A stretch of 64,000 nt of DNA, taken from the NCBI RefSeq assembly GCF_021028975.2, contig NC_059440.1:31186001-31250000 (forward strand), given 5' to 3'. The number at the start of each line of letters is the position of its first letter. Position 1 is the stretch's first letter. This DNA comes from Sphaerodactylus townsendi. Lineage: Eukaryota. Positions 15,600-49,293 of this stretch are shown here, piece by piece. A program made the translations under genes and the position numbers. The notes under the pieces are model-generated. The model ran no database searches, was not told where the DNA came from, and saw nothing but the letters and a program-made list of their open reading frames with translations.

Positions 15600-17130
15600 T
15601 CAGGAAAACGCTGCCGCGGCATCCTTTCAGAGACCCTGTCCTGCCGGCGCTCTGCACATGCTCAACGGCCTCTCCGCCCTCAGCGCCCTTAAGGGCGAAC
15701 TCCTCTCCGCCCCCCCCCCCCTTCCTCCGCGCAAGGAAACCGAAAGGCGGCCTGGCTGCCGGAGCCGCGCCTTGGCCCAGCCCGCCGCCCCGCCCTGTGG
15801 CGCAGGAGAGCCGGTGGCCGACGAGCCTCCCGGAGCCCCCGACTCGCTCGGCGGCCGTCAGGGCCCAGGCGCTCCGCCCGCCTCGCCTCGCCTCCCGGCC
15901 GGCCAGGCCCGCGCCGTGTCGTGAGGCGGCGCGGAGGCGAAGCGACGCGACTAGGCCGCGGCGAGCCGGGGACTGGCGTAGCCGCCGTGGCCGGGTGGCG
16001 TAGGGCGAGGGCCGGGCAGGCGGCGCGCGGCGAGGCCCTCCGCTCCGGGCCGCCTCCTCCTCCTCCTGCTCCCCGATGTGGCTGCAGCAGCGGCTGAAGG
16101 GGCTGCCGGGCCTGGGGTCGAGCAGCTGGGCGAGGCGGCTGCTGGCCCTGCTGAGCTTCGTGCTGGTGGCCTACTGGTACCTCGGCGGGGCCTGGCCGCG
16201 CCTGCTGCCCTGGAGGCCCGGCCGGCCGGCGGGGGGCGCGGCGGGGCTGTGCCTGCAGGCCGAGACCCGGGCCTGGCAGGCCTTGGCCGAGAGGGGCGAG
16301 GCCCGCCTGCTGCAGTTGCCGCCCGGGTCCGGCGCAGGAGACCCCGAGGCCCCGCTGGCCCTGGTGGGCAACGGGCACCTGCTGCTGGACGTGGCCGCCA
16401 ACCAGCTGTGGGTGGCCCCGGCCCTGGGCAAGGGTGCCGCCTCCGCCTCCCCTTCTCTGGGCACCGAGTACCCGGCCTTGGCCCAGCTGAGGACCCCGGG
16501 CAATGCCCTGGGCGAGACAGGGGCCGCCGCGGTCATGCTGAGGGACGGGGCCGTCCACCGGGCCCGCTGCGTCCACATGGGGCCGGCGGCCTCCGACGGG
16601 GCGGCCCGGGAGTGCGTGGCCGTGCGGGAGGAGGTGCTGGCCCACCGTGGGCGGCCACACCTGTACCTGCAGCGCCTGGCCATTGTCAACCCCACCGAGC
16701 GACAGGTGGCCTTTGAGGTGTCCGGCCCGCTCTCAGCGGCCTCCCTGACTCTTGGCGGCGGCGGGGCCAAGACCGGCAGCAAGTTTGTCACCAGCGTGGA
16801 GAAAGTGGGAGACCGGCAGTTCCTGCTCTCCTCGGGCCGCGTGCTCCAGCCAGACGGTGCCAAGGTGGTGCTGGTGGTGGTGGCCGCCAAGAAGTTGGTC
16901 ACCCGGGTGCAGGTGGTGCCCAAGTCGCAGTTTGAAGAGACCTTGGTGTCTGTGGTTCACACCTCTGAGCCCATCGACGTCTCCCAGCTGGACGAGACCT
17001 TCAGCAAGCTCCGGGAGGCGGCCAAAAGGGAGATGCTGGAGGTGCTGAGGGTGAGGGTGGAAGACCTCCTGCAGGAACATCGCAAGGCCTGGGCCGACCT
17101 GTTCATCTCAGGTGAGGGGGCTGCCTCTTG
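15600..17130. promoter_or_regulatory. CpG island / KIAA2013 promoter and exon 1
   Basis: Very GC- and CpG-rich stretch with GC boxes (ccgccc) before and across the KIAA2013 ATG; boundaries approximate. Confidence 0.85.
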
Positions 17131-19176
17131 ACCCCCGACTCAGTGCTGCTGCCTGTTCTCAGAATCCCTAATTAGGACTGGATTTTGTCGAAGGCTTTCA
17201 TGGCCGGAATCACTTGGGTGCTGTGTGGTTTCCAGGCTGTAGATCTGAAGATGCCAGCCACAGATGCAGGCGAAACTTCAGGAGAGAATGCTGCTAGAAC
17301 ACAGCCATACAGCCCGGAAACCACACAGCACCCTAGGACTGGATTAATTGGAATTGGTTTGTATACCGCATTCATGGCCTGCCCGCTCTTCCACTGTGGA
17401 AGGACCAAAGTTCAAGCTCTGGCATTTAAACTTGAAAAGATGATGCAGTGATATAAAAGATCTCTGCCTACAATGCTGGAGAGTGGCTGCCAGGCAGACA
17501 ATACTGATCTTTAGGGTGTTGTTGGTTTACTGGGTTGTGTGGCCGTACTCCAGCAGCATTTTCATTTGACGTTTCACCTGCATCTGTGGCTGGCATCTTC
17601 AGAAGATCTGATAGTAGTAAATTCTACTGGAACACAGCCATACAACCCAGAAAACCCACAGCACCCTAGTGATTCTGGCTGAGAAAGCCTTCGACAACAC
17701 AATACTGATCTTGAGAGTCTGATTCAGGCATGTGTTTCATTTGGAGCTCAAGGCAGCCTGCATGTGCTCTTAGGTAGGCGTTGCCCAGAGCCATTTAGCT
17801 ACAGATAGCTAAAATAAATGGAAGCTGTGGAGCACCTTTAAGGCTGACATTTTACTTTGGCGTAAGCCCGCCATTCTCAGCCAGGGCACCGTGGTACCCT
17901 GGGGTACCATGAGCATGTCCCAGGGGTACTGCGGCAACACTACTGCCCCCCTCCCTCATTTTTGTGGTGTCTCCCACCAGCACCAGCAAGGACATTGAGC
18001 TGGCCCATGGGGCAGGGCCTGCCACAAGGTCAGCAGCCCCCCCCCCAAGTGGGGTGTGTGGCAAGCAGGGGCAATGGGAGGGGAAGGTGGAGGGTGGCGG
18101 CAGGGGTACCGTGAGATATGAAGAGTGAGGTCAAGGGTACCCTGACCTCGAAAAGGTTGGGAAACACTGGCGTAAGCTTTAGTGGACAAAAGCCCCCTTT
18201 TACAGAACGTACATTACATTACGTTAGATGAAATTGTAATATAACCAGCATTGAGCTTTTGACTTGAGAGCAAGAAAAGCTAGGAAAGGAACCTAATCCA
18301 TTTCTTAATGTTGCAGGGGTGGAAATGAGGAAGATCACGGATGCTCACACGCCTTCCAGCAAGACGGTCAACATGACACTCTATTACGTTCTGTCCACCA
18401 CCCCAGCTCCCCTTCTGGAGCCTCTCATTAGCAGTGAGGAAAAGGAGAAGATGGGAGCCACGCTGAACTATGCTGACCACTGCTTCAGCGGCCACGCCAC
18501 CATGCACGCAGAGACCCTCTGGCCGGCGCACTTGCCGAGCGTGTCTCAGGTCCTGCAGCTCTCAGATTTGTGGAAGCTGACCCTGCAGAAAAGAGGGTGC
18601 AGAGGCCTTCTGGCGGCCGGAGCCCACGGCCTCATGCAAGGGATGGTGCTCAGCTTTGGAGGGCTGCAGTTTACAGAGAACCACCTCCAGTTTCAAGCTG
18701 ACCCAGATGTGCTCCATAACAGCTACTCCTTGCGTGGGATTCATTACAACAAGGACTTGATCAACCTGGCCGTTCTGCTGGACGCGGATGGGAAGCCCTT
18801 CCTGCACGTCTCTGTGAAGTTCCAAGAGAAGCCGGTCCAGCTGTACGCCTGCGAGGGGGGCTGCTCGAATGAGCCTGTCGAGCTCACTTCGGAGCTGCGT
18901 GGCCACACTTTCCCCGTCATGGTGACGCAGCCCATCACGCCGCTGCTCTACATCTCGACAGACTTGGTCCACTTGCAGGATCTGAGGCACACGCTGCACC
19001 TGAAGGCGATCCTGGCGCACGAAGAGCACATGGCGAAGCAGTACCCCGGCTTGCCCTTCCTCTTCTGGTTCAGCGTGGCCTCCCTCATCACCCTCTTCCA
19101 CTTGTTCCTCTTCAAGCTCATTTACAATGAGTATTGTGGACCGGGGGCAAAGCCGCTATTCCGAAGCAAAGTGTGA
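16076..19176 (+). CDS. KIAA2013: KIAA2013 uncharacterized membrane protein (DUF2152-type), two main coding exons
   Basis: Exon 1 16076-17111 (MWLQQRLKGLPGL...WADLFIS, donor G|GTGAG) and exon 2 18317-19176 (acceptor ttgcag; GVEMRKITDAHTPSS...NYADHCFSGHATMHAE...YNEYCGPGAKPLFRSKV*). N- and C-terminal hydrophobic segments. A donor at 19170/19171 could splice to a short last exon (e.g. 19775-19780, GAT TAA after a polypyrimidine tract). Confidence 0.95.
17868..18169. mobile_element. hAT MITE in KIAA2013 intron 1
   Basis: Perfect 8-bp TSD GCGTAAGC; right end GGTTGGGAAACACTG; internal inverted GGTACC motifs. Confidence 0.8.
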
Positions 19177-22243: not shown

Positions 22244-22365
22244 ATGGCAGAAGTCAGCAGCCAATATTTCTTTACTTCATCCATGCCTCTCAAGGGCCGC
22301 CAGACTCAGGTGGGCAACACAACCCTAATCCCAAAGCACGAGAAGATGGCCTTCTTAACTGGCAG
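22244..22365 (+). CDS. Candidate first coding exon of the guanylyl cyclase
   Basis: Open frame MAEVSSQYFFTSSMPLKGRQTQVGNTTLIPKHEKMAFLTG ending AG|GTAGG in phase 2, which matches the single leftover G at the 24664 acceptor. An in-frame ATG at 22346 (aagATGG) is an alternative start. Confidence 0.55.
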
Positions 22366-24663
22366 GTAGGCACCAGAATGGAGAACGAGGCCAGCTTGGT
22401 TTTCCTGAATTTTACTGGGTGGTGGTATAGGCTTTGCAGAGGAAACATCTAAATGGGTCAGGAAGGTACAAATGCGAAGGATGGGAAGATGCAGGAAGCC
22501 GAGGGTAGAAAACATTAAATAAAAATATACCGGAGAAGCCGCAGCGTAGAAGACAAGAAATTGCAGTTTGACCATCCTTAACTGACACAGATTTGTCTGA
22601 AAGTGACCTGTTTTCTACAAAATGTTTCTCTTTACTTTTTAACCTTCTCAAGGAACCTGATTTTTATTATTCAAGAAAAGTAAATTTTACATCACCCAGC
22701 ATTGCTTGCAATGCAGGTAAAATTTAATATCCTACACTGCACACACAGTGTTCAGGGGTATTCTTTATTTTTTTAAAATCCCCCCCTTGAAATTCAATTT
22801 CTCGATTTTCTGAATTAGTAAGAAGCTGTGCCAAGACAAAGGGGCTAGAGATTGACCTATCAACAAATACTGGGTTTCGTGTGTGCCCTAGATTTGTTGT
22901 TTCCATATTATTTCCATGCCCCAAAATATTATAGAGGGTAATGTCAGAACTATTTAAAAATAAAAGATGTTTGGGGAGGAAGAAATTAAGTGAGGGATAC
23001 AAAATCCATTAAAGGTAAAAAAAATAATTTCCTATTTTTAATATGTTCTTGGTGTGCGGTTTTAAAGCACAGTATCAGCTTGAACCAAAACATTCAGCTG
23101 CGGTTGGGAACTGAATTCCATGCAAGAAAAACAATCCCTGATAAATCCTCCATTCCCCAAAAAGATTGAACTATAAACATTTCAGACAATGCTGCAGTGG
23201 ATACCCACCATTAACATCTGCTTTAAGAAAGGCTGCAAATAAGGAAATGCTGAATTATGACATCAATATATCCAAGTAAAGGAAGACATAAAACCATTAT
23301 TAAGTGCTGTTTATATTTTTAACATTCAAAAACCTAGATTTGCACTACAGTTCATAATTGCATTATCTAAGATGAGTTACTGAGAGTAACTTTCTCAAAT
23401 ATCTTTCTGTTAGTGGCATCCAAATTCTCCATCTCTCAGCTTATGATCATGGCTAAAATTCACCCCGTTTTTTAGCTCCTGCATTAATTGTAGAAACCAT
23501 TCTATTTGATCTACACTGCAAAATGTCAGCACATTTAATTGTTCAAGAAATGCCTATAAAGAGATTGCAAAATCATCTCTCCATTGTGGGGGGCCATAAC
23601 AGATAAACCCCTTTTAGTCAGTACAAGTTTGTAATCTGGATATGCCCTTAAAAAATGCCAGCTGTTGTGCAAGGGAGGAAAAATACAGCTCAGCAAGAGA
23701 CTGGCGTGACTTTGGAGGAGCAGCTTTCCTTTGACAGGAACACAAATGGGTAATTTAAAAAGCATCTCTATTTAAAAGGTGGTGCAAATTAACACTCAGG
23801 GGAATCTCAGTCTGTCTCTTGATCAGCGGTCGCAAATGTGTAACATCCGGGAAGAGTTCAGTGATGTAGAACCGGATTAAAAAAAAAAACCTTACACAAT
23901 TCCACCTGCGAAATGCACCTACTTCAGTCCAATTCTGAAAAAATAGTCCAATTCAAGAAAAAAAAAGACTGCTCCCTCCATTATCTTAATGCGATTCAAA
24001 GGAGTCCCTGTGATCACACTGGAATTGTTATATTTCACATCTACCCCACTCATGGAAAGAAAGATCTGAAGAGAGATGAATAAATAGTGCCTTTGGATCA
24101 CACTGGTGAAATGTTTTTGGCACAAACAGTAGTGAAAAGAAACAGAGAATTTTTCCGAGGACCAGAGCTGTGTCTCTGGTTCAAATCCCTATTTAGCCAT
24201 AAAGTCTGTTAGGTGACCTTGGGTGAGTCACCTTCTCTCAGGTGAGTCTATCCCACAATGCTGCTCTCAGGACCATTTTGTGGGTGGGGTGCGTGGGTGG
24301 GTGGGACCTATGCGCTTTATCCTAACTTCCTTAGAGGTAGGGGGTAAGGATACAAATACAGTGAACAAATGCTTAAAAATAATAAACACAATATATCAGC
24401 TGAGCCCAAGATGCTTTTAAAAAATTCTAAGAGGAGCTTTGTGTATCTGACACATTGCCCATTGATGAAGGTTTCCGTGAAACCTGGAAGACTGCAAGCC
24501 AACTTAAACTGACCCAGTAAAGAAAGAAATGCAACCCTTGCTTTCTTCTGAGACCAAATGCTGCCATGTGTGGGCCTCAACACTTACCTTTTCTAGGAAG
24601 CCTTTGACCCAAACTTCTGCCTCTATTTTCTGCACCACTGACCAAAGTATCATCTCTTTCCAG

Positions 24664-27600
24664 GTGTGGTACCAGCAAGCCGGTGAGACGGGTTTGGGCT
24701 GCCTGCCTGGTCTCTCTGCTTGCCCTGATGGCTAGTGTCTCTCTTGAGTTAAACACCACCCTGGACTTGTGGGGGAACATTGAGAAAGCCCTTGGAGGCT
24801 TGCCTTCATGTCAGACTCTTCTGGTTCTTCAACTCGTTGGTTTCCTTCAGGAAGAGGGGAAGTATCCTTGCTGCCAGTGGGGCAAGAGAGACGGTGAAGG
24901 GGAGGCTCAAGAAAACCCATTGTTGCCAGAGCGGATGCTGAAGACGTTAGCTGTTCTCTGTGAAGAGGCTGGAAAGAAGGTTCTGGAAGTGAAACAGCAA
25001 TGCAAAGAAGGGGAAGATTTTGAGTGCCAGGTTTTCATCAACAAGGTAAGATGGAAACTAAACAACACTCACGTACCACAGATGGTTCTTGCGCATTCCA
25101 GGATTATTTTAGAACTTTTGGAGATGTTGGAGAGCCCAGAAGAGGACCTCAAGGCTACAAGGTCAAACCCCGATTGGGTTGATGTGGCATCTCTCAGACT
25201 CATCCTGCGGCTTAAAGGGGCCATCCTGGATTCTCGAGAAACATTCCAATCCTCGGAAGATTTCCAAGCACGGTGGCATCAGATGTCCACCATCCTCAAC
25301 TACTATGTTTTTGCATCCGAGAACGTTCAGCACTGCTGGATGGAGAACCCAAACCTCTCCATCTCTCCCACCCAACGTGAAGGAACACCTGTCTTCACCC
25401 CCTCCTTGGACTCTCTGTCTTTTCCACCTCGTCGAAGTTTACTGAAGGCACTCGAGTCCCTCCAGGTCTGTGTGCTGGAACAAAGTCAGAAGATGCTCAG
25501 CAAGAAATCCAAGGAGGTTCTTTCCTTGGCCAGCCTCCAAGTCAGCCTCTTCCTGGTCACTGGCCTCATCTACCCCGTCATCCTCGTGTCCTTCAAGGAG
25601 ATGACAAACTGGATCCAGAGCTATGCTTGGAGCCTCAAGGAACGGACAGAGGACTTGAAACGGGAGAGGTGCTTGGCTGAGGATCTCCTCCATCAGATGT
25701 TGCCTAAGTCTGTGGCCAAGCAGCTCAGGAAGCATAAGCAAGTGGAGGCAGAGAATTACGACCAGGTGAATGAATCTATCAGCGAGGGGTGGGAGGCGGT
25801 AGAATCTCACTGTTCCTAATATCTACTCTACTGAAGCCCACCCCAAACAGGCACCCTGAAACGGTACCTTTCTTCAAAGGGTTTTCCTCCAAAATTAATG
25901 AAAAAACTAAGATACCGCTGATGTCAAATGGCTGATAGAAATGGAACCAGCAGCGACTGGCTGGGATGGGGGTAGGGGTGGGGAACAGAACCCAAACCCC
26001 TCAGCTTCCTTGTGTGTCAGCCTCTTGCAGGGAAGAACCCTGTCACCCTGTCCCTCAAAACAAACCTATCCACACTCGATTGGCCCCGATCCAGGGTCCA
26101 CGCTCCTTCCCATCGTTACCTCTCCCTCTCATCTTTTCTTGATAGGCACTCCCTTGTCTTTGTAGGGCTTTGATAGGGGAGACTGCCCCCTTCGCTCCAT
26201 GAGATAATATTTTGCACTGGATTGAGAGGGGCCATTACCCAAACAAGGCCCTTAATTGGGCAATTAGATCTTCCCCTGGAATCGAAAGCATCAAAGGCTC
26301 ATTCTAAAGGTGGGAGGGGGGCAGTGTGTTGCAGAAAACCATCTGGATATAATTATAACAAGCACCCAGGATTTAAAAATCTAAAGAAAGAGCAAGGGCA
26401 TTGAAGGATGAGCTTCAGACAGAGGTGGAAACGCCTTGTCAACCTCAGAGAGGGTATTTTGCATAGGAGCAGAAGGAAGATTATCACCTGCCGCTGTCCC
26501 TTAACTTGGCCGCTCGGCTCCCATGCTGCACAAACCAGCAGACATACTGCTATGAACCACAGAGAGCAGGGATGGACCCTACAGGCCTGGTTGGAGAGTA
26601 AAGTTCATGCTGCCCATGGTCTCCCCCTGGCAGGTGACCATCTTCTTCTCTGACGTGGTGGGCTTCACCAGTATTGCTGCCTCCTGCACACCATTGCAAG
26701 TTGTGGAGATGCTCAACAACCTCTACATCTGCTTTGATACCAGAATAGAATCGTATGATGTGTACAAGGTGAGCACCAGTCCACGCTGGCCGGCTGGTTG
26801 GTTGATTGGGAAGCAGCACAGTGAGAATCTATTTGGGTTGAGGAGAACATCCTAAGCCAGGGGTCTTCAACATATGGCCCTCCAGATGTTCACGGACTAC
26901 GATTCCCATCAGCCCCTGCCAGCATGGCCAATTGGCAGAGCTGATGGGAACTGTAGTCCATGAACATGAACATCTGGAGCTCCCAAAGGTATCTGGTGGG
27001 CCACTTTGAGTAGCAGGGTGCTGGACTAGATCGACTCTGGTCTGATCCAGCAGGCTCTTTCTTATGTTCTTATGGAGGGCCATAGGTTGGAGACCCCTGC
27101 CCTGAGCAGAAAGGAGGAACTGACATTTCAGAAGCAGTCCTTGGTCTGACATGCACCCCCATTGTTTACCTCCCCCAGGTGGAAACCATTGGAGACGCCT
27201 ACATGGTTGTGAGTGGCTTGCCAGAGAGGAACGGGACGATGCACGCCGACGAGATTGCCAAAATGGCGCTGGATTTAGTGGCAGCCGTCCGGCAGGTTGT
27301 GATACCGCACATGCCCAGTGGCAAGCTGCAGTTACGGGCAGGGATTCACACAGGTGGGCCGAAGGGGTGGGGGAGAGGTGTGGTCTGATGGCCGTGTGGG
27401 AAGGAGGCTGGTTTTGCCCCACTCATTGGGAGGACCAGACCTTGGGAGTTATTTTCATGAATCAAGTGATGGCTCAGCAGACCACCCTGTTCCACAAGTC
27501 CTGCTGTTCTTCTAACATGTGTCCTCTGTAGGTCCTTGTGTAGCCGGAGTTGTTGGATACAAAATGCCTCGCTATTGCCTCTTTGGAGACACGGTGAACA

Positions 27601-30600
27601 CAGCTTCGCGGATGGAGTCAACCAGTTTGCGTGAGTGGCTACAGGTTCCCAGCTCCAGGCCACGAATGCTCAGGAGCCCAGGAAATAAACCAGAGGCCAT
27701 GAAATGTGCAGTCCCTTCTGCCTCCTCCTCCGCTTCCCTGACTTAGTTTGATTCCAGGTTTGCCAGAACTGTGCCCCTGAGCATGTGCAGATTGCTTTCC
27801 CCTTATCTTCGTATAACCAACTGCTGACACGTCTGAGATTGGCAGGAAGTTCCTGGATATTTGTAGCTGAGGATGCAGGAGTACCTTTCCTTTCTCGTAT
27901 GCTTTCCTTGAACTCAGGTCAGCGTATCCTAGTTAAACTTTAGCTTGTGACTGGAAAGATTCCAAACAGCTCAAGTAAGCATAATTTATAGACTTCCAGT
28001 ATAAGCATAACTACTCTTAGACAGAAAATTCTGGTCAGCTTAGTATGTTCTAAATATGCTCACTTTTACCAAAACCAGTAAGCAATAGAGATGGATTACT
28101 TTGGCATTAGCTAATACAGATTCTTGGTCCCTTTGATGCCTGATTTCGGGCTCCTTCTTCAATCCCTTCCTCTTGTGACCTGCCTAAATTCATGGTTCCC
28201 AAAAGGCTCAAATCCCTACACCGCTGAGAAGATTTCGGTGGAGCAGCCCGTTGACTGAGCCATCCGGTTACTTATTTCCAGCTCAGAAGATCCATATAAG
28301 TTCGGCCACGTACCTCGCCCTTCTCGAAGATGATGCTTATGACATCGAGCTGAGAGGGGAAATTGAAGTGAAGGTGGTTATGGTTATTATTATTATTATC
28401 ATCAATTGCCATTGTATGTTTATATCACTGTCACTGTATGAGGCAATGCAAGGAATGTATGCAGAAAATTACCTCTGGAATTCTGGGTCGCAAGGAACTT
28501 GCATTTGAAATTTGGCAGGGTAGAGAGGCAAGAAAGGAATGGGAGGGGGCAGAAAGGTGGGAGATGGGTGAGGAGAAGCCAGAACCAGACACGGATCTTG
28601 GGGGGGGGGGGCGCTGAGGGGGCAGGCTTCTCATTGGCCACGAGCACGGGTCCACACATGTCCAGTTAATCAGACTGAAGCTCCTTTTATGGGTCTGTCA
28701 TGACTGCAAGACCCATTTTTTAAAAATCTACAACCCTAGAGAACTAGATTTCCCCTCTTCTCTGACGGCTGGGAAATCCACAGCCATCACTGCTCTATGG
28801 AGTTACCTAGGGCAGGACTGCTATACTTTGAATGGTTGCAGCTTGACAGGCAGAGATTCTACCGGTGCAGCTTGGCCCATCACAGCATCTTCAGGCTGGA
28901 TGAAGCTGAACGGCTGCCTATCACACAATGATTAACTGATGAAGAATACCAGAGAGAACACAAATGGTGGCAAAAGAGAAGCAAGTTAGCTGTAAGGGAG
29001 GCAAAAAAGGATTATGAGGAACGCATGGCTGCGAACATCAAGACTAGCAACAAACAGTTCTTCAAGTACATCAAAAGCAGGAAGCCAGCTAGGGAAGCGG
29101 TAGGCCCGTTAGATGATGAAGGAACAAAAGGTGTGCTAAAAGATGACAGGGAGATTGCAGAGAAGCTGAATGAATTCTTTGCATCTGTCTTCACCCAAGA
29201 GGAGGTGAGGAAAATTCCTGCACCTGAACCAAGCTTCTTAGGAGGCGAATCCGAGGAACTAGCGAAGATAGTGGTAGACAAGGAAGAAGTTCTGGCAGCC
29301 ATTGATAAACTAAATGCTACCAAATCCCCTGGCCCAGATTGCATTCATCCAAGAGTTCTTCAAGAGCTCAAGCATGAAATTGCTGATGTTCTCACATTAA
29401 TATGCAACTTATCCCTGAAATCAGGCTCCATCCCTGAAGACTGGAAGATGGCCAATGTCACACCAATCTTTAAGAAAGGGTCTAGGGGGGACCCAGGAAA
29501 TTACAGGCCAGTCAGTTTGACATCTGTTCCTGGTAAATTAGTAGAATCTATCATTAAAGATAAAATTATTAAACATGTAGAAAAGCAAGACCTGCTGAGG
29601 AAGAGTCAGCATGGCTTTTGTAGAGGCAAATCCTGCCTTACAAACTTACTAGAGTTCTTTGAGGGTGTAAACAGGCATGTGGATAAGGGGGAACCAGTGG
29701 ACATTGTCTACTTGGATTTCCAAAAGGCTTTTGACAAAGTTCCTCACCAGAGACTGTTGAGAAAAAATCCCAAAGTAATGAAGGAATAAGAGGGGAAGTC
29801 CTCCTATGGATTAAAAAACTTGGTTGAGGAACAGGAAGCAAAGGGTGGGTATAAATGGGAAGCTCTCACAATGGAGAGATGTAGGGAGTGGTGTCCCCCA
29901 AGGATCCGTTTTGGGACCAGTGCTCTTTAACTTATTCATAAATGACCTGGAAGTAGGGGTGGGTAGTGTGGTGGCTAAGTTTGCCGATGATACCAAATTA
30001 TGTAGGGTGGTGAGAACCACAAAGGATTGCGAAGAGCTCCAAGTGGACCTTGATAAATTAGGTGAGTGGGCTAAGAAATGGCAAATGCAGTTCAATGTAG
30101 CTAAATGTAAAGTGATGCACATAGGGGCAAAAAATCCAAACTTCACCTACACGCTACAGGGGTCAGTGCTATCAGTCACAGACCAGGAAAGGGATTTGGG
30201 CGTCTTAGTTGATAGTTCCATGGGAATGTCAACTCAATGCATGGCAGCTGTGAAAAAGGCAAACTCTATGCTGGGGATCATTAGGAAAGGGGAGTTGATA
30301 CCAAAACTGCAAGGATTGTCATGCCCTTATATAAAGCAGTGGTGCGACCGCGACTTGGAGTACTGTGTTCAGTCTCTGGTCGCCACATCTCAAAAAGGAT
30401 ATTGGAAGAGATAGAAAAAGTGCAGAGAAGGGCAAACGAGGATGATTGAAGGACTGGGAGCACCTTCTTTATGAGGAGAGGCTGCAGCGTTTGGGACTCT
30501 TTAGTTTGGAGAGGAGGCGGCTGAGGGGGGATATGATTGAAGTCTATAAAATGATGCATGGGGTAGAAAATGTTGACAGAGAGAAATTTTTCTCTCTTTC

Positions 30601-33379
30601 TCACAATACTAGAACCAGGGGGCATTCATTGAAAATGCTGGGGGGAAGAATTGGGACTAATAAAAGGAAACACTTCTTCACGCAACGTGTGATTGGTGTT
30701 TGGAATATGCTGCCACAGGAGGTGGTGATGGCCACTAACCTGGATAGCTTTAAAAAGGGCTTGGACAGATTTATGGAGGAGAAGTCAATCTATGGCTACC
30801 AATCTTGATCCTCCTTGATCTCAGATTGCAAATGCCTTAGCAGACCAGGTGCTCAGGAGCAGCAGCAGCAGCAGAAGGCCATTGCTTTCACATCCTGCAT
30901 GTGAGCTCCCAAAGGCACCTGGTGGGCCACTGCGAGTAGCAGAATGCTGGACTAGATGGACTCTGGTCTGATCCAGCAGGCTAGTTCTTATGTTCTTATG
31001 ATTCAAGGCACTGGCATGCTCCCACACAACAAAAGAGGGCAACCGTTGTGAACACTCCTATACACCACCTCAACAATATGGACATAGTGTTGTAAATTAT
31101 ATGTTCTAATACTGTATGTTTTAACAGGATTTATCCAGTGGTGGGATTCAGCAGGGTCACACCACTTCAGCAGAACCGGTTGTTAAAATGGTGCTTGTAA
31201 ACAACTGGTTGTTAAATTATTTGAATCCCACCACTGGAACAGGTTGTTAAATAATTTGAATTCCACCACTGGGTCTATCCGCATTTGTTAGCCACCGTGG
31301 GACTATGGTATAAGGCAGGGTACACATTGTAGTAATAAATAAATAAAAATAAATAAATAACTGCTTTTAAAAAGGCGCAAATAAGGGCAAAATATTGGTC
31401 ACAACACTCCCCGAGTAATGGGATGGCCTAGCCGATGAACAGAAATTAAAATTTCTCTTGGACAGTTCAGATGCAGATTATTTTGAGTCAGCTGCAAATT
31501 TTTCAGCTGAGATAATGGATGATTTTAAATTAGTTTATTTGGTTTTTTGTTTTGCTGTATTTTGTGCTGTAACTTCATGACTTAATGTATATGCCAGTAA
31601 AGGCTATGCATGTAAATAATTAAATGCCTTCTCTGCTCCTGCCAGGGCAAAGGGAAAATGAATACTTACTGGCTGCTTGGAAACAAGAACTATAGTGTCC
31701 AAAACGACAGCTTGGTGTGCCACTGGAATCCAGGGATGCCCCGGAAAAAGACAAGGGAGAACAGTCCCCTCTCTGCCCAGCAGGTACGTCCAGGGAGGCT
31801 CTGGAGATGCAGACTAAAAGAATGCCTTGGGAGGGCACCACACTGACATCATCTTCAGCACAGGTGTCAAACTCGTGGCCCTCCAGATGTTCATGAACTA
31901 CAATTCCCATCAGTCCTTGCCAGTATAGCCAATGCTCATGTTGGGAGGGACTGATGGGACTCGTAGTTCATGGACATCTGGAGGGCCACGAGTTTGACAC
32001 CCCTGATCTTCAGGGAAGCTTCAAGCTTTAAACAAGATCAAGTTTTCGATACCCAGTGCATGAAATAAAAGGAGCCCTTGCCACTCTCTGAGGCAGTGAA
32101 TTCCACTGTCAAACAGCCCAGACGGTCAGGAAGTTCTTCCTAACGTTTAGGTGGAATCTCTTTTCCTGCACCTTGAATCCATTTCTCCGTGTCCTAGTCT
32201 CTGAGGCACCAGAAAACAAGCTTGCTCCCTCTTTGACATGACATCCCTTCAGATATTTAAACATTGCTATCATGTCCCCCCTTAACCTTCACTTCTCCAG
32301 ATTAAACATCCCCATCTCTCTAAGCCTCTCTTCTTTGTGTCTGTAAAAAAAATGACCCAAAGGGAAGGGATATCTACAGTGGTGGGATCCAAAAATTTTA
32401 GTAACAGGTTCCCATGGTGGTGGGATTCAAACAGTGGCATAACACCAATGGGGCTGGGCGGGGCACGACAGGGGCGTGGCCGGGCATTCCAGGGGCGGGG
32501 CATTAATAATTTCTCTGTTACTGTAAAAAACTCTTACTTTAAAAAAAGTTCCTAATTTCCAGCTGGTATCTTTCTGTCCATAATTTAAACTCATTATAGC
32601 AAGTCCTATCGTCTACTGCCAACAGAAACAACTACTTCTCCTCTAATTGACTGCCTGTCAAACACTTAATACTTTCAAATACTTAATTCTGTTTCTAGAA
32701 ATCAAAAGAAGGATACTTTCCTTAAATAATGAACTTTACCATATTTCTAAAACATGTTTTTAAAACAGCCCAACAGGGAGAATTATCCTGCTTTCTACCT
32801 TCGCTAACCAGCCACATAGGAAACAACAGGACTTTATGATTTTTGGACCTAATGGAATTTCTAGCGGAAAAGCAGACCCAATTAGTAACCCCCTCTCGGC
32901 ACACACAGATAATTAGTACTCTCGGGAACTGGTGAGAACCCGCTGGATCCCACCTCTGGATATCTGCCAGGATATCCTGTCCTGCAGTATTTGTCTTGTA
33001 CAGAATTGCCAGTTCTTCTATGAAGCTGACACAGGGGTGCTTTTGGGGACGTGTTCACTGCCTATCCATACAATTTCTGAGTGCCTTTTCCATTTGACAG
33101 CTCAGCACAGGAACCCTGGGGACGCCAGTGAGCAGGAAAACCACCAACACTACTCATGAGCAAATGCGCTGCCTTGGGGCAAAAACTTATTTCGCTGACA
33201 GTGCTGCCAGTGTTGGGGACCAAGACTCTGAGCCTGGCTTCCAAGATCAATGCCAGACAAGTCATCTCCCAAATTCTCACCTGGGAGAGAGATGCCCTGA
33301 CTTACTGGATCATCAACAATGCCACCTAGAGCCACCGAACACAATGGGGCTCTTACCTGGATCTGTGGGCAGTGTGTGA
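24664..33379 (+). CDS. Two-TM membrane guanylyl cyclase without kinase-homology domain (NIT-domain GC-like), exons 2-8
   Basis: In-frame GT/AG exons: 24664-25765 (TM1, ectodomain, TM2, coiled coil ending [15 protein letters not shown]...EAENYDQ), 26634-26768 ([12 protein letters not shown]...YDVYK), 27179-27353 ([15 protein letters not shown]...LRAGIHT), 27532-27630 ([30 protein letters not shown]), 28282-28373 (KIHISS...RGEIEVK), 31646-31783 ([10 protein letters not shown]), 33101-33379 (tail to TGA, less certain). Metal-binding aspartates, guanine-specifying Glu/Cys and the NxxxR motif are intact. Confidence 0.9.
26858..27099. mobile_element. Palindromic hAT MITE with a nested short CR1 3' end
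   Basis: Ends CAGGGGTCT / AGACCCCTG; ~26977-27073 matches the CR1 3' UTR at 30900-31000, including TTCTTATGTTCTTATG. Confidence 0.8.
28934..31000 (+). mobile_element. CR1 LINE, 5'-truncated, in an intron of the cyclase gene
   Basis: ORF2 reverse transcriptase pieces ([51 protein letters not shown]) broken by frameshifts; ends in (TTCTTATG)2. Confidence 0.95.
31136..31271. mobile_element. Short hAT MITE (CAGTGGTGGGAT ends)
   Basis: TIRs CAGTGGTGGGATTC / GAATTCCACCACTG; 6/8 TSD match. Confidence 0.7.
31859..32005. mobile_element. Palindromic hAT MITE
   Basis: Long inverted arms and perfect TSD ATCTTCAG; similar element at 34247-34377. Confidence 0.85.
32377..32958. mobile_element. Non-autonomous hAT transposon
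   Basis: TIR CAGTGGTGGGATCC / GGATCCCACCTCTG; TSD GATATCTA / GATATCTG. Relatives at 34958-35144 and 50819-51198. Confidence 0.85.
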
Positions 33380-40376: not shown

Positions 40377-40527
40377 NNNNNNNNNNNNNNNNNNNNNNNN
40401 NNNNNNNNNNNNNNNNNNNNNNNNNNNNNNNNNNNNNNNNNNNNNNNNNNNNNNNNNNNNNNNNNNNNNNNNNNNNNNNNNNNNNNNNNNNNNNNNNNNN
40501 NNNNNNNNNNNNNNNNNNNNNNNNNNN
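40377..40527. other. Assembly gap
   Basis: 151 consecutive N. Confidence 1.
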
Positions 40528-46184: not shown

Positions 46185-49100
46185 ATGAACCCCAAACTCA
46201 TCTGCTCCGGCTGGTTTCTGCTGATTCTGCTTCTCACACACGACCAAGGAAGGGCCAAACCCATGACCAACGTACAGGTAAGAGACCCCGTCAGATTTCC
46301 CTAGACAGGATGGAGGCACTGTTGGAATGTTACCCATTTATATCCATAGCACTACAGAGAGCATCTGACAGGAAGAAAATGACTGAGGGAAATGTCATGT
46401 TGGAGAAGAGTGTTGGGGATGCTGTGGAGACCCCAAAAGACACGCAGATGTGCGTGGGGGGGGGGGGTGTAGATCAAACCAAGCCTGAACTTTCCCTAGA
46501 AACTAAAATGACTAAATTAAGATTATCAAACTGCGGTCACACCATGAGAAGGCAAGACTCACTGGAAAAGACAATAATGCTAGAAAAACTTGAAGGCAGA
46601 GGGATAAGAGTAAGACCCAACGTGCATTGGTCTGGCAGGGTCTGCAATCTGTGGCTCTCCAGATGTTCATGAACTACAATTCCCATCAGCCCCTGCCAGC
46701 ATGGCCAATCGGCATATACTTTCCCAGTCATCCACAGACTTTGGAAGAACTAATTTTAAAAATCTCTCCTTGCTTCCCAACCACTCCAACTCACCCCTTT
46801 TGGCCACTAAGGTTGTGGATTCAATCCAATCTCAAAGCCCCAGGGGTCTGCAACCTGCAGCTCTCCAGATGTTCATGGACTAATTGGCCATGCTGGCAGG
46901 GGCTGATGGGAATTGTAGTTCATGAACATCTGGAGAGCCACAGGTTGCAGACCCCAGCCTCTGGCCTAATAAAAGATGTCATGACTCTCACTTTGCATGG
47001 CTGTTAATGACAGGGCACTTTGGAAGCTGTTAACTCCTAGGGTCTCCATGTGCTGGAAGCAACTTGGGGGTACTTAACACACACACAGAGCAGGAAGGGG
47101 GCTTGGAGATCATCTAGTCCAACTTTCTGCCCCTTGCAGGAATGTGCAACTATGCACCTCTGGTCAATGGCCACCCACAGCCTCTACTTCAAGCTCTCCC
47201 ATGCAGGGAAGTCCACCTCCTCCTGGGGCAGGTTGTTGCATTGCTGGACAGCTCTTTTCTCCAAGAAGATAGTTCCTGGCAGGTCCGCAGAAGGAGAGCT
47301 AGATTTGAGTCCAGTAAGTCAAGATGTTCAGGGTCTTAGCACTGGAGAGTTAATGCTCCCTCTTAAAACATCTTGACAGCTTTGGCTCTTGAAAGCTCAT
47401 AGCCCAAAAATGCTGTTGGGATCTAAGAGGCTCCTGGGCTTGAATCTGACTCTTCTTCCAATAAGTTTCCCGAATATTTAGGCTAGATCTCCTCTGATGC
47501 CAGAGAGCAGCAGGGTCCTGCCTAGTTCTCCTAGTACAGGGGTAGGGAACCTGCGGCTCTCCAGATGTTCAGGAACTACAATTCCCATCAGCCCCTACTA
47601 GCATGGCCAATTGGCCATGCTGACAGAGGCTGATGGGAATTGTAGTTCCTGAACATCTGGAGAGCCGCAGGTTCCCTACCCCTGTCCTAGTAGAATTCCT
47701 GGCAGTCCAGTATATCTGGACATTGTAGCTTTGGACAGAAAATAGCTATGAGTTGTCGAAGGCTTTCATGGCCGGAGTCACTTGGGTGCTGTGTGGTTTC
47801 CGGGCTGTATGGCCGTGTTCTAGCAGCATTCTCTCCTGATCCTCTGAAGATGCCAGCCATAGATGCAGGTGAAATGTCAGGAGAGAATGCTGCTAGAACA
47901 CGGCCATACAGCCCAGAAACCACACAGCACCCAAATAGCTATGAGGTTGGATCCTGCCCATCAGCCCTGCGAATGATGTTAGAGGAAAGCCCCACTGTTA
48001 TTGCAACAGATCTATGGATCCATCCCACAGGCCTTGGCTTAGAAGGAATGGAAGAAATTAAGAGAGAAGAAGTATCTTATCAACTGTTATCTCAATGGAC
48101 CCTCCATGTTCAAAGGCAGCATACCTCCAAACATCAGTTGATGGAGAAGTCAGCCACAGCGCCATCGTTCTGCTTGTGATTGACAGCTGTGGGAGACAGG
48201 GTGGCAGGCTTGGTGGTCGTTTGGGCTAACCCCACACAGCTTTTGGGGCACATTGAGTTTTTAGGGGAGTTTTTAGGGAGTAGCAACTATTTGGGACTAT
48301 GGAAGAGAGGGGACAGCAGCCAGGGATTAGATACGTGGCTGGTGGAGTAGAAGGCCATGCCAGCTCTTGTCTTCTCGGAGGTAGCCATGAACAGATGATG
48401 GAGATGATGCCAGCTTCAGGTTGGGAAATACCTGCAGATGTTGGGGGTAGAGACAGAGGATGATGAGGGAAGGTGGAGTATATAATGCCACAGAATCCAC
48501 CTTCCAAAGCAGCCGTTTTCATCCAGGCAAAGTGGCATCTCCAGCCACTACCTGGAGGTTGGCAACTACAGATTGAGGAAGAGAGATTTGCAAATAGGTT
48601 CACTCCAGACAATTGAACTGTGGGGCAGCCAGCCTCAGTTTCCCCTTCTGTAAAATAGGGTGACTTCACACGGGAGTCCTTGCTTTCTGGTCTTTAGGGA
48701 TCCGATTGTAAAACTGGCTTTAGGAGATTCTTATTTCTTTAAAAAATGTATTCTGTCTTTTTAGAGGGCAAATAAAATGTTCTCCCTCGGTTATGAAGCA
48801 TTGCTTATTTATTATTATTGCTTTTATTATTTATTTATTTATTATTTGTTATTATTATTGCTAACAATCACATCAATAATAGCAATCATTAGCCAGACTG
48901 CACCATGAATACCAGAATTATGCAAGTGACCCACAATTAGCAAGCTGTGATAGAAAATAACTGGGGTGGGGGTGTCTTTCTCCCCCCCCTCTCTTTCAGG
49001 CTTTGTCTAAATTGTTAGAAGAGGACCTAGGGCACCCGCTGGGGTCTGAGGAATCGGAGCAGGATGAGACCCTCCTCACAGGGGGCGTGGAGCAACGAGA

Positions 49101-49293
49101 CACTCCTTTCCCCTGGTCCAGAACCCTCCCGGAGGGGACCTCCTCCGTTTCAGAAAGTGCCTTCCAGCGGCTTTTCAGCGATCTTCTGGGCTCCTCGCGT
49201 AGCTTCCGGGGCAGGAGCAAAAAGGGTCTCTCCAGGGGCTGCTTTGGTGTCAAACTGGACCGAATCGGGGCCCTGAGCGGGCTGGGATGCTGA
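46185..49293 (+). CDS. C-type natriuretic peptide precursor, CNP3 type
   Basis: Exon 1 46185-46277 (signal peptide [31 protein letters not shown], donor GTAAG) and exon 2 49000-49293 ending [24 protein letters not shown]. No tail after the second Cys, as in CNPs. Location in the BNP cluster indicates CNP3 rather than mammalian NPPC (CNP4). Donor 15 nt after the stop (49309) implies a non-coding exon 3, candidate acceptor at 50343. Confidence 0.9.
47537..47684. mobile_element. Near-perfect palindromic hAT MITE in CNP3 intron 1
   Basis: 148-bp hairpin, TIR CAGGGGTAGGGAACCT, perfect TSD TCCTAGTA. Related copies at ~39151-39270 and ~46636-46957. Confidence 0.9.

What the first reader, a model, noticed from the sequence alone, without database searches (positions are those of the whole stretch)
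22244..33379. Intact two-TM, kinase-less guanylyl cyclase resembling NIT-domain GCs, in a reptile genome
Seen: a spliced ORF of about 713 aa with TM1 ([20 protein letters not shown]), a ~255-aa helical-looking domain with several Cys and N-glycosylation sequons (NTT, NNT, NLS), TM2 ([23 protein letters not shown]), a short coiled coil ([35 protein letters not shown]) and a complete class III cyclase with GTP-specifying residues, so it could work as a homodimer. Established: mammalian receptor GCs (GC-A to GC-G) have one TM and a kinase-homology domain, and soluble GCs have H-NOX/PAS domains; this protein fits neither. The TM-sensor-TM-helix-cyclase layout is that of NIT (nitrate/nitrite-sensing) domain GCs described in placozoans and in Platynereis, where they act in NO signalling. 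Inference: this is an amniote member of that class, a third type of vertebrate cGMP source. I know of no such gene at the human KIAA2013-NPPB interval.
Basis: partly seen in the sequence, partly recalled or inferred. Interest (0 to 1): 0.9.

Follow-up and report, generated by a model that had tools for sequence, protein, structure and literature searches.

The report
Kinase-less two-pass vertebrate guanylyl cyclase
This lizard-type genome carries an intact gene for a membrane enzyme that makes cGMP; its outer sensor looks like a nitrate/nitrite-sensing (NIT) domain, and it belongs to an unnamed family found from sharks to marsupials that papers on such enzymes say vertebrates lack.

Summary
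Eight GT-AG exons (22244-33379, + strand) add up to 2142 nt, that is 713 codons plus TGA. They encode an N-terminal tail, TM1, a 260-aa helical ectodomain (six family-conserved Cys, 3 sequons), TM2, a signalling helix, a receptor-type guanylyl cyclase and a C-terminal tail. There is no kinase-homology, ANF-receptor or H-NOX domain.

The gene is not a reptile oddity. Over 200 orthologues were found: sharks, rays, sturgeon, teleosts including zebrafish, lungfish, amphibians, turtles, squamates, birds and marsupials. No eutherian appeared. All names are automatic. The cyclase is 83-96% identical across jawed vertebrates. Exon structure is conserved from teleost to squamate. KIAA2013 is the upstream neighbour in three reptiles.

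Squamates, this gene included, have lost a co-varying Arg59/Glu179 pair kept in 75 of 87 members. No RNA data exist for this species.

The parts
22244..22365 (+). Coding exon 0. It holds the ATG and a 40-aa cytoplasmic N-tail, and ends AG|gtaggc with 2 bases carried over.
   Evidence: Sequence read. The N-terminus matches those of the Rhineura and Zootoca orthologues (tblastn). Splice dinucleotides checked.
24664..25765 (+). Large exon 1. It encodes the end of the N-tail, TM1, the ectodomain, TM2, the juxtamembrane IQxYA motif and the signalling helix.
   Evidence: 56-72% identical to squamate orthologues and 33-50% to the other vertebrate orthologues. AlphaFold model built with the alignment has pLDDT 84.8.
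24692..24751 (+). TM1, a signal-anchor helix that follows an RR pair.
   Evidence: The AF2 helix 2-39 runs straight on into the ectodomain. Orthologues have 45-70 residues before it, so it is a TM segment and not a cleaved signal peptide.
24752..25525 (+). All-helical ectodomain of about 260 aa. It has six family-conserved Cys (C43, C107, C218 and C263 invariant; C93 and C115 in 86 of 87) and three N-glycosylation sequons, NLS at residues 224-226 among them; the family-conserved Asn222 lies two residues before it. It is NIT-like by fold.
25526..25594 (+). TM2, with a conserved YP.
   Evidence: Aligned to TM2 of the Anopheles NIT cyclase by hhalign at 97.6% probability.
25610..25732 (+). Juxtamembrane WIQSYA motif and signalling helix (coiled coil).
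   Evidence: Pfam HNOBA positions 180-216, E 9.5e-5. Matches the GC-A signalling helix. dN/dS is 0.11.
26634..26768 (+). Cyclase exon 2. It carries the first metal-binding Asp, in FFSDVVGFT.
   Evidence: Pfam PF00211, E 2.2e-11. 90-96% identical to lizard orthologues.
27179..27353 (+). Cyclase exon 3. VETIGDAY carries the GTP-specifying Glu and the second metal-binding Asp.
   Evidence: Pfam E 5.6e-14. Residue-by-residue match of the 97%-identical Zootoca orthologue to GC-A.
27532..27630 (+). Cyclase exon 4. [18 protein letters not shown] carries the GTP-specifying Cys and the catalytic Asn and Arg.
   Evidence: Pfam E 1.2e-14.
28282..28373 (+). Cyclase exon 5.
   Evidence: Pfam gives only a weak match for this exon alone (E 0.16). 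96% identical to Rhineura and Zootoca.
31646..31783 (+). Exon 6. It encodes the end of the cyclase ([12 protein letters not shown]) and the family motif [15 protein letters not shown].
33101..33379 (+). Last exon. It encodes the poorly conserved C-tail, which ends in the family motif LLPGSVGSV followed by TGA.
26858..27074 (.). High-copy SINE in intron 2. It is not part of the gene product.
   Evidence: Contig depth here is 10^5 to 10^7 against about 90 elsewhere.
29025..30808 (+). LINE reverse-transcriptase fragment in intron 5. It is not part of the gene product.
   Evidence: Pfam RVT_1, E 3e-12 and 9e-14.

Best explanation
The locus is an intact, selectively maintained member of an unnamed family of membrane guanylyl cyclases found across jawed vertebrates. 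The protein has a short cytoplasmic N-tail, then TM1. Next comes an extracellular, glycosylated, Cys-rich (probably disulfide-bonded) sensor built only of helices. TM2 follows and runs without a break into the signalling helix, which leads into a receptor-type cyclase domain.

A single chain carries every catalytic and GTP-specifying residue. It should therefore work as a homodimer that makes cGMP.

There is no kinase-homology domain. The inferred signal path is the bacterial-sensor type. A ligand-induced shift of the last ectodomain helix would pass through TM2 into the coiled coil and set the cyclase dimer.

The sensor is most likely a very divergent NIT domain. That would make the family the vertebrate descendant of the animal NIT cyclases. 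Its ligand is unknown. By analogy it could be an NO-derived species or a small anion. Squamates, including this gene, have replaced the family's conserved Arg59/Glu179 pair, so their ligand response may differ.

Shown here: the gene structure, domains, conservation, selection and predicted fold. Inferred: dimerisation, signalling mechanism, NIT ancestry and ligand.
For: Gene and domains.

Family range: searches found over 200 orthologues from sharks to marsupials. The cyclase is 83-96% identical to the stingray protein.

Same eight-exon structure in a teleost and an amphisbaenian.

Synteny: KIAA2013 lies directly upstream in the window, in Rhineura and in Chelonia, where the two genes were fused into one gene model.

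Selection: dN/dS against the nearest relative is 0.45 in the ectodomain and 0.11 in TM2 plus the signalling helix. Two sister species show 10 synonymous and 7 non-synonymous changes in exon 1, with no indel or stop.

Catalytic residues are identical to those of GC-A. The nearest solved cyclases are GC-A (297 bits) and GC-C (263 bits), against about 170 bits for soluble GC.

NIT link:
- The AF2 model (pLDDT 84.8) has continuous TM1-to-ectodomain and ectodomain-to-TM2-to-signalling-helix helices.
- NasR's NIT domain is Foldseek rank 1 of 350,542 chains.
- ESM features give NIT at 0.90 with 180 shared features for the stingray ectodomain, and 0.77 for the window's.
- hhalign gives 97.6% probability over TM2, the IQxYA motif and the signalling helix against an Anopheles NIT cyclase.
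- The relaxed hhalign alignment is collinear and places the family's LQxxR on the NIT LQxER.
Against: Pfam NIT (PF08376) hits none of 87 family members, even at E up to 10. Profile-profile comparison of the ectodomain with mosquito NIT domains is not significant (P 0.057, and 0.21 with a larger profile).

The cyclase is as similar to a kinase-bearing receptor GC (57%) as to mosquito NIT cyclases (56%).

The six conserved Cys have no counterpart in the mosquito NIT domains aligned here. The window's own protein lacks Arg59 and Glu179. No transcript, protein or activity data were available.
Confidence: 0.65

Rival explanations
1. The family arose within vertebrates from an ordinary receptor guanylyl cyclase of the GC-A type. 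That ancestor lost its ANF-receptor and kinase-homology domains and gained an unrelated, new helical Cys-rich ectodomain. On this view the resemblance to NIT is the generic look of helical-bundle sensors.
For: The nearest solved cyclases are GC-A and GC-C. Identity to a kinase-bearing receptor GC is 57%, no lower than the 56% to mosquito NIT cyclases. Pfam NIT is negative in 87 of 87 members and hhalign is not significant. An exhaustive search with the ectodomain found 21 cluster representatives. All whose source could be named are jawed vertebrates, and no invertebrate appeared.
Against: The alignment with mosquito NIT cyclases runs about 39 residues further N-terminal than with the receptor GC. 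It covers TM2 and the IQxYA juxtamembrane motif. The ectodomain has the same length and position as in NIT cyclases. The NIT domain of NasR is the top fold hit and the only one spanning the whole domain. Language-model features give NIT, then the related PilJ and DAHL sensors. Moroz et al. place the NIT cyclases themselves in the receptor-GC group (PMC7400543), so similarity to GC-A is expected under either view.
Confidence: 0.25
2. In squamates, including this species, the sensor has lost its original ligand function. The protein would then be a constitutive or differently regulated cyclase, or a gene on its way to decay.
For: All seven squamates in the alignment have replaced both Arg59 and Glu179, which 75 of 87 members keep. 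Ectodomain dN/dS is raised to 0.45. One Anolis sagrei model has a repetitive segment in place of most of the ectodomain.
Against: The frame is open through all eight exons, with canonical splice sites. dN/dS is below 1 in the ectodomain and 0.11 in the signalling helix. No indel or stop is seen in exon 1 in two sister species, although their introns carry five indels. The six family-conserved Cys are kept, and Asn222 is unchanged in the window.
Confidence: 0.08

Closest known systems
Animal NIT-domain guanylyl cyclases: Platynereis NIT-GC1/2, Trichoplax NIT cyclases, and the insect and sea-urchin forms noted by Anantharaman et al. 2006. The examples examined here are Anopheles P0135 and P0245-P0262.
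   Same: The layout is the same: TM, a helical ectodomain of 260-285 aa, TM, the IQxYA motif, a signalling helix and a receptor-type cyclase, with no kinase-homology domain. Identity is 56% from TM2 to the end of the cyclase. Fold and language-model hits point to NIT.
   Different: The ectodomain is not recognised by Pfam NIT or by hhalign. It has six conserved Cys and conserved N-glycosylation sites. It also has a conserved cytoplasmic N-tail motif and a C-terminal LLPG[FS]V motif. The papers state that vertebrates (PMC7400543) or chordates (bioRxiv 10.1101/2023.08.02.551600) lack NIT cyclases.
Vertebrate receptor guanylyl cyclases GC-A to GC-G (NPR1, NPR2, GUCY2C/D/F and others)
   Same: The signalling helix and catalytic domain are shared. 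GC-A is the best solved match at 297 bits, and all catalytic and GTP-specifying residues are identical. Both are expected to act as homodimers.
   Different: There is no ANF_receptor ectodomain and no kinase-homology domain, and there are two TM segments instead of one.
NIT domain of the NasR antiterminator (PDB 4AKK) and bacterial TM-sensor-TM-HAMP receptors
   Different: Sequence identity is 5%, rmsd is 5.7 A and the Foldseek E-value is only 0.18. The vertebrate domain is extracellular, Cys-rich and glycosylated. The output domain is a cyclase, not an ANTAR or HAMP module.
Soluble guanylyl cyclases (alpha/beta heterodimers)
   Same: They share a cyclase domain, more distantly (about 170 bits). 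The last roughly 37 positions of Pfam HNOBA, which are its coiled coil, also match.
   Different: There is no H-NOX or PAS domain. The protein is membrane-bound, and all catalytic residues sit in one chain.

Membership tests
Class III cyclase, guanylyl-specific, receptor type | Pfam Guanylate_cyc (PF00211) catalytic domain | tested here: met
   Exons 2-4 score E 2e-11 to 1e-14. Exon 5 alone is weak, E 0.16. Full-length orthologues score E 1e-68 to 1e-73.
Class III cyclase, guanylyl-specific, receptor type | Two metal-binding Asp, GTP-specifying Glu and Cys, and transition-state Asn and Arg, all in one chain | tested here: met
   The window exons read [17 protein letters not shown] and [18 protein letters not shown]. 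These positions are identical to GC-A in the alignment of the Zootoca orthologue, which is 71-97% identical to the window exon by exon (97% and 79% in the two exons carrying these motifs).
Animal NIT-domain guanylyl cyclases | Layout TM, sensor, TM, signalling helix, cyclase, without a kinase-homology domain | tested here: met
   compared with the Anopheles NIT cyclases.
Animal NIT-domain guanylyl cyclases | Ectodomain matches Pfam NIT (PF08376) | tested here: not met
   0 of 87 family members match at E up to 10. The window's exon 1 gives no hit at E up to 1. Anopheles controls score E 3e-30 and 9e-33.
Animal NIT-domain guanylyl cyclases | Profile-profile similarity of the ectodomain to known animal NIT domains | tested here: inconclusive
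   hhalign gives P 0.057 with 8 mosquito domains and 0.21 with 15. The alignment is collinear and places LQxxR on LQxER. The NIT profile was shallow, built from mosquitoes only.
Animal NIT-domain guanylyl cyclases | NIT fold (double four-helix bundle, as in NasR 4AKK) | tested here: inconclusive
Animal NIT-domain guanylyl cyclases | Conserved Arg residues of the proposed ligand site | tested here: inconclusive
   The family keeps LQxxR, with Arg in 76 of 87 members, co-varying with Glu179. The window and all the squamates examined have lost both. Equivalence to the NIT arginines rests on an alignment that is not significant.
Animal NIT-domain guanylyl cyclases | Cyclase domain groups with NIT cyclases in a phylogeny | not tested
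Pairwise identities of 56% and 57% do not decide the matter.
Animal NIT-domain guanylyl cyclases | cGMP production dependent on NO or nitrite and requiring the sensor domain | not testable with these tools
   This was shown for Platynereis NIT-GC1 only (bioRxiv 10.1101/2023.08.02.551600).
Canonical receptor guanylyl cyclases (GC-A to GC-G) | ANF_receptor ectodomain, a single TM and a kinase-homology domain | tested here: not met
   There is no PF01094, PF07714 or PF00069 in the window's exons or in ten orthologues. Two TM helices are present.
Soluble guanylyl cyclases | H-NOX haem domain plus a PAS-type HNOBA domain | tested here: not met
   Only positions 180-216 of the 216-position HNOBA model match, which is the coiled coil. 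There is no H-NOX hit.

The most novel reading that the evidence does not exclude
Non-eutherian vertebrates keep a haem-independent extracellular sensor of NO-derived species (NO, nitrite or nitrate) that is coupled directly to cGMP synthesis. It would be a very divergent NIT cyclase inherited from the bilaterian ancestor, lost in placental mammals, and retuned in squamates through loss of the Arg59/Glu179 pair. This would be a third route from nitrogen oxides or other extracellular cues to cGMP in vertebrates.
Probability: 0.25. Interest if true: 0.9.

Novelty: new variant of a known kind. Interest (0 to 1): 0.78.

Why it matters
Textbook vertebrate cGMP synthesis has two sources: seven single-pass receptor cyclases with a kinase-homology domain, and the haem-based soluble cyclases. 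This gene represents a third architecture. It is highly conserved, with the cyclase 83-96% identical from sharks to lizards.

It is present in the standard non-mammalian models (zebrafish, Xenopus, birds, opossum), yet I found no paper on it in the library searched. The two studies that define animal NIT cyclases state that vertebrates or chordates lack them.

Its apparent absence from placental mammals would explain why it was overlooked. The ligand, expression site and physiology can all be tested directly with reporter assays and knock-outs in existing model animals.

Tried and rejected
- **Single-sequence AlphaFold of exon 1.** pLDDT was 42 and the model was unusable. It was replaced by a model built from the alignment.
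- **phmmer and hmmsearch of the ectodomain against PDB sequences.** These gave only the GC-A signalling helix, or noise such as FADD at E 0.09.
- **Dimer prediction for two copies of the exon 1 product.** No verdict (score 0.00, controls not run). This is no evidence either way.
- **RNA evidence.** No RNA run holds the stretch. The runs that were laid are genomic contigs.
- **A wider set of NIT cyclases.** The word-based search from the Anopheles NIT domain returned only 18 mosquito proteins, so the NIT profile stayed shallow and no phylogeny with proper outgroups could be built.
- **Synteny look-ups.** They gave nothing for the sparrow and no neighbours for the wallaby or the barb.
- **Earlier findings of the scan.** The tool did not open in three tries.
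- **Joined spliced protein.** It was never assembled or searched. Exons were handled one by one by reference, and full-length orthologues served as proxies.
- **Pseudogene reading.** Rejected because of the open frame, dN/dS below 1 and the clean exons in sister species.
- **Cleaved signal peptide instead of TM1.** Rejected because orthologues carry a conserved cytoplasmic segment of 45-70 aa before it.


Full report
**1. The observation**

The + strand between 22244 and 33379 holds eight coding exons, read directly from the sequence. Their ends were checked by script:
- 22244-22365
- 24664-25765
- 26634-26768
- 27179-27353
- 27532-27630
- 28282-28373
- 31646-31783
- 33101-33379

All internal junctions are AG...GT and the phases fit. 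Exons were used one at a time by reference, and full-length orthologues served as proxies.

Exon 1 is one long open frame. It holds TM1 (24692-24751), an ectodomain of about 260 aa with three sequons and eight Cys, TM2 (25526-25594) and the coiled coil. Pfam finds the cyclase domain in exons 2-5. In exon 1 it finds only the last 37 positions of HNOBA, which is the signalling helix. It finds no kinase, ANF_receptor or H-NOX domain.

The first 19 residues match the N-termini of the Rhineura and Zootoca proteins. The last exon ends in LLPGSVGSV, a motif (LLPG[FS]V) found at the C-terminus of orthologues from rays to frogs.

**2. What it belongs to**

I ran an exhaustive HMMER search of 1.84 billion representative proteins with the ectodomain. 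It found only 21 clusters. Those that could be named are jawed vertebrates.

Word-based searches then gave more than 200 orthologues. They come from:
- sharks and rays
- sturgeons, bichir, gar and bowfin
- many teleosts, including zebrafish
- lungfish
- frogs, a salamander and a caecilian
- turtles, lizards and snakes
- birds
- three marsupials

No eutherian appeared, although each list is cut at 120 rows. Every name is automatic and they contradict one another: 'uncharacterized', 'gcy-22-like', 'speract receptor-like', 'adenylate cyclase type 2', 'retinal guanylyl cyclase 1-like'.

The signalling helix plus cyclase is 83-96% identical between a stingray and everything from teleosts to birds. 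The eight-exon structure is the same in a barb and an amphisbaenian. KIAA2013 (Pfam DUF2152) lies directly upstream on the same strand in the window and in Rhineura. In Chelonia the two genes were even fused into one gene model.

**3. Is it functional here?**

Against the nearest relative (a Logan contig, 70% identical in protein), dN/dS is 0.45 in the ectodomain and 0.11 in TM2 plus the signalling helix. Genomic contigs of the same species are nearly identical to the window. Two sister species differ by about 2%. In exon 1 the listed changes are 10 synonymous and 7 non-synonymous, with no indel or stop, while five indels lie in the introns.

The catalytic residues are all present and match GC-A position by position: two Asp, the Glu and Cys that specify GTP, and the Asn and Arg. 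A homodimer should therefore be active. No RNA run exists for this organism, so expression is not shown.

**4. Is the ectodomain a NIT domain?**

Against:
- Pfam NIT hits none of 87 diverse family members, even at E up to 10. The Anopheles controls score E 1e-30 or better.
- Profile-profile comparison with mosquito NIT domains gives P 0.057, and 0.21 with a somewhat larger profile.

For:
- **Predicted model.** With the 87-sequence alignment AlphaFold gives a confident model (pLDDT 84.8, pTM 0.75). It has about nine helices. TM1 runs on into the first ectodomain helix, and the last ectodomain helix runs on through TM2 into the signalling helix.
- **Foldseek.** Among 350,542 PDB chains the first hit is the NIT domain of NasR (4AKK), but at E 0.18 and TM-score 0.30.
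- **Language-model features.** For the window's ectodomain they give NIT clusters as the ten best hits, at a weak 0.77. For the slower-evolving stingray orthologue they give 0.90 with 180 of 256 shared features, followed by bacterial NIT clusters and then the related DAHL and PilJ sensors.
- **TM2 and juxtamembrane segment.** hhalign aligns the family with an Anopheles NIT cyclase at 97.6% probability over 77 columns. The alignment starts inside TM2 and includes a shared Pro and the IQxYA motif. A kinase-bearing receptor GC aligns only from the signalling helix on.
- **Collinear alignment.** The relaxed hhalign alignment is collinear over about 220 columns. It places the family's LQxxR on the NIT LQxER, and W...[RK]xL[IL]...E on the matching mosquito helix.

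I read this as probable but unproven homology, about two chances in three.

**5. A point specific to this lineage**

In the family, Arg59 (of LQxxR) and Glu179 occur together in 75 of 87 sequences. All seven squamates in the alignment, the window included, have replaced both. Arg59 became Gly, Glu, Ile or Ala, and Glu179 became Gly. This is probably one event, so it is weak as covariation. It does suggest the two residues act together. If Arg59 is the NIT ligand arginine, the reptile protein is the member least likely to sense the ancestral ligand.

**6. Mechanism**

Shown or predicted here:
- a two-pass topology with an extracellular, Cys-rich, glycosylated helical sensor
- a continuous helix from the sensor through TM2 into the coiled coil
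- a complete GTP-specific catalytic set

Inferred from what is known of receptor cyclases and bacterial transmembrane sensors (the signalling-helix concept, PMC1592074): the protein forms a homodimer, and ligand-driven displacement of the last sensor helix passes through TM2 and the coiled coil to the catalytic dimer.

Without a kinase-homology domain, the ATP and phosphorylation control seen in GC-A cannot apply. The conserved N-tail and C-terminal motifs are candidates for other regulation or for trafficking. The ligand is unknown. For Platynereis NIT-GC1 an NO donor raises cGMP, and this needs the NIT domain (bioRxiv 10.1101/2023.08.02.551600).

**7. Comparison with the literature**

NIT cyclases were first noted in insects and sea urchins (PMC1592074). 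They were then described in placozoans and many bilaterians, with the statement that 'vertebrates lost NIT domains' (PMC7400543). In Platynereis the accompanying tree reports them absent from Chordata (bioRxiv 10.1101/2023.08.02.551600).

Searches for the zebrafish gene name, for NIT together with guanylyl cyclase and vertebrate terms, and for kinase-less cyclases found no paper on this family. A survey of guanylyl-cyclase evolution does not mention it either. Subscription journals are not covered. The gene models are public, but the family appears to be unrecognised.

**8. Limits**

- No phylogeny with proper outgroups could be built.
- The ectodomain could not be folded alone.
- The dimer prediction gave no verdict.
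- The scan's earlier findings never opened.

**Verdict**

This is a real, conserved, kinase-less two-pass guanylyl cyclase of a vertebrate-wide family, probably a divergent NIT cyclase. I rate it a new variant of a known kind, and of high interest.

Noticed in passing
window 49051-49290 (+): This is a natriuretic-peptide exon (Pfam ANP, E 3.7e-14). The peptide ends ...[18 protein letters not shown] followed directly by a stop. A ring with no C-terminal tail is the CNP type (from memory), so the downstream neighbour looks like a CNP-3-type gene rather than NPPB. A guanylyl cyclase gene thus sits next to the natriuretic-peptide cluster. Nothing suggests a functional link.
   Followed up: partly
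window 16076-19176 (+): KIAA2013 (Pfam DUF2152) lies here in two large exons. It is the upstream neighbour on the same strand, as in Rhineura (L002). In Chelonia mydas the two genes are fused in one gene model (P0146).
   Followed up: yes
window 3574-4137 (-): An open frame here looks, from memory, like a PLOD1 (lysyl hydroxylase) exon. Pfam gave no hit for it.
   Followed up: partly
window 26858-27074; similar copies near 31860-32000 and 46650-47000: A very high-copy SINE. Contig depth is 10^5 to 10^7 against about 90 for the flanks in four genomic runs. One copy lies in intron 2 of the cyclase gene.
   Followed up: partly
window 29025-30808 (+): A LINE reverse-transcriptase fragment (Pfam RVT_1) with a broken frame, inside intron 5.
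   Followed up: partly
window 40377-40527: A run of 151 N, either an assembly gap or masked. It was left untouched.
   Followed up: no
exon 1, codons 59 and 179 (window 24857-24859 and 25217-25219): The family-wide Arg59/Glu179 pair, present in 75 of 87 members, is replaced in all seven squamates examined. In sister species B codon 59 reads GAG (Glu) instead of GGG (Gly).
   Followed up: partly
orthologues P0004, P0009, P0013, P0022, P0024; window 22244-22365 and 33350-33376: There are two conserved cytoplasmic motifs outside the known domains. One is an N-tail motif, SSASLK in fish and frogs and FFTSS..LKG in lizards. The other is the C-terminal LLPG[FS]V. Their function is unknown.
   Followed up: no
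P0021 and P0263 (Anolis sagrei): The Anolis sagrei models have a repetitive Asn/Ser/Thr-rich segment in place of most of the ectodomain, and one model is 1118 aa long. This could be mis-annotation or real decay of the sensor in anoles.
   Followed up: no
P0135, P0136, P0138, P0141 (Anopheles): These 1300-aa 'guanylate cyclase' entries are two NIT cyclases in tandem read as one protein, each with NIT, TM, signalling helix and cyclase. The two NIT domains are only 23% identical.
   Followed up: partly
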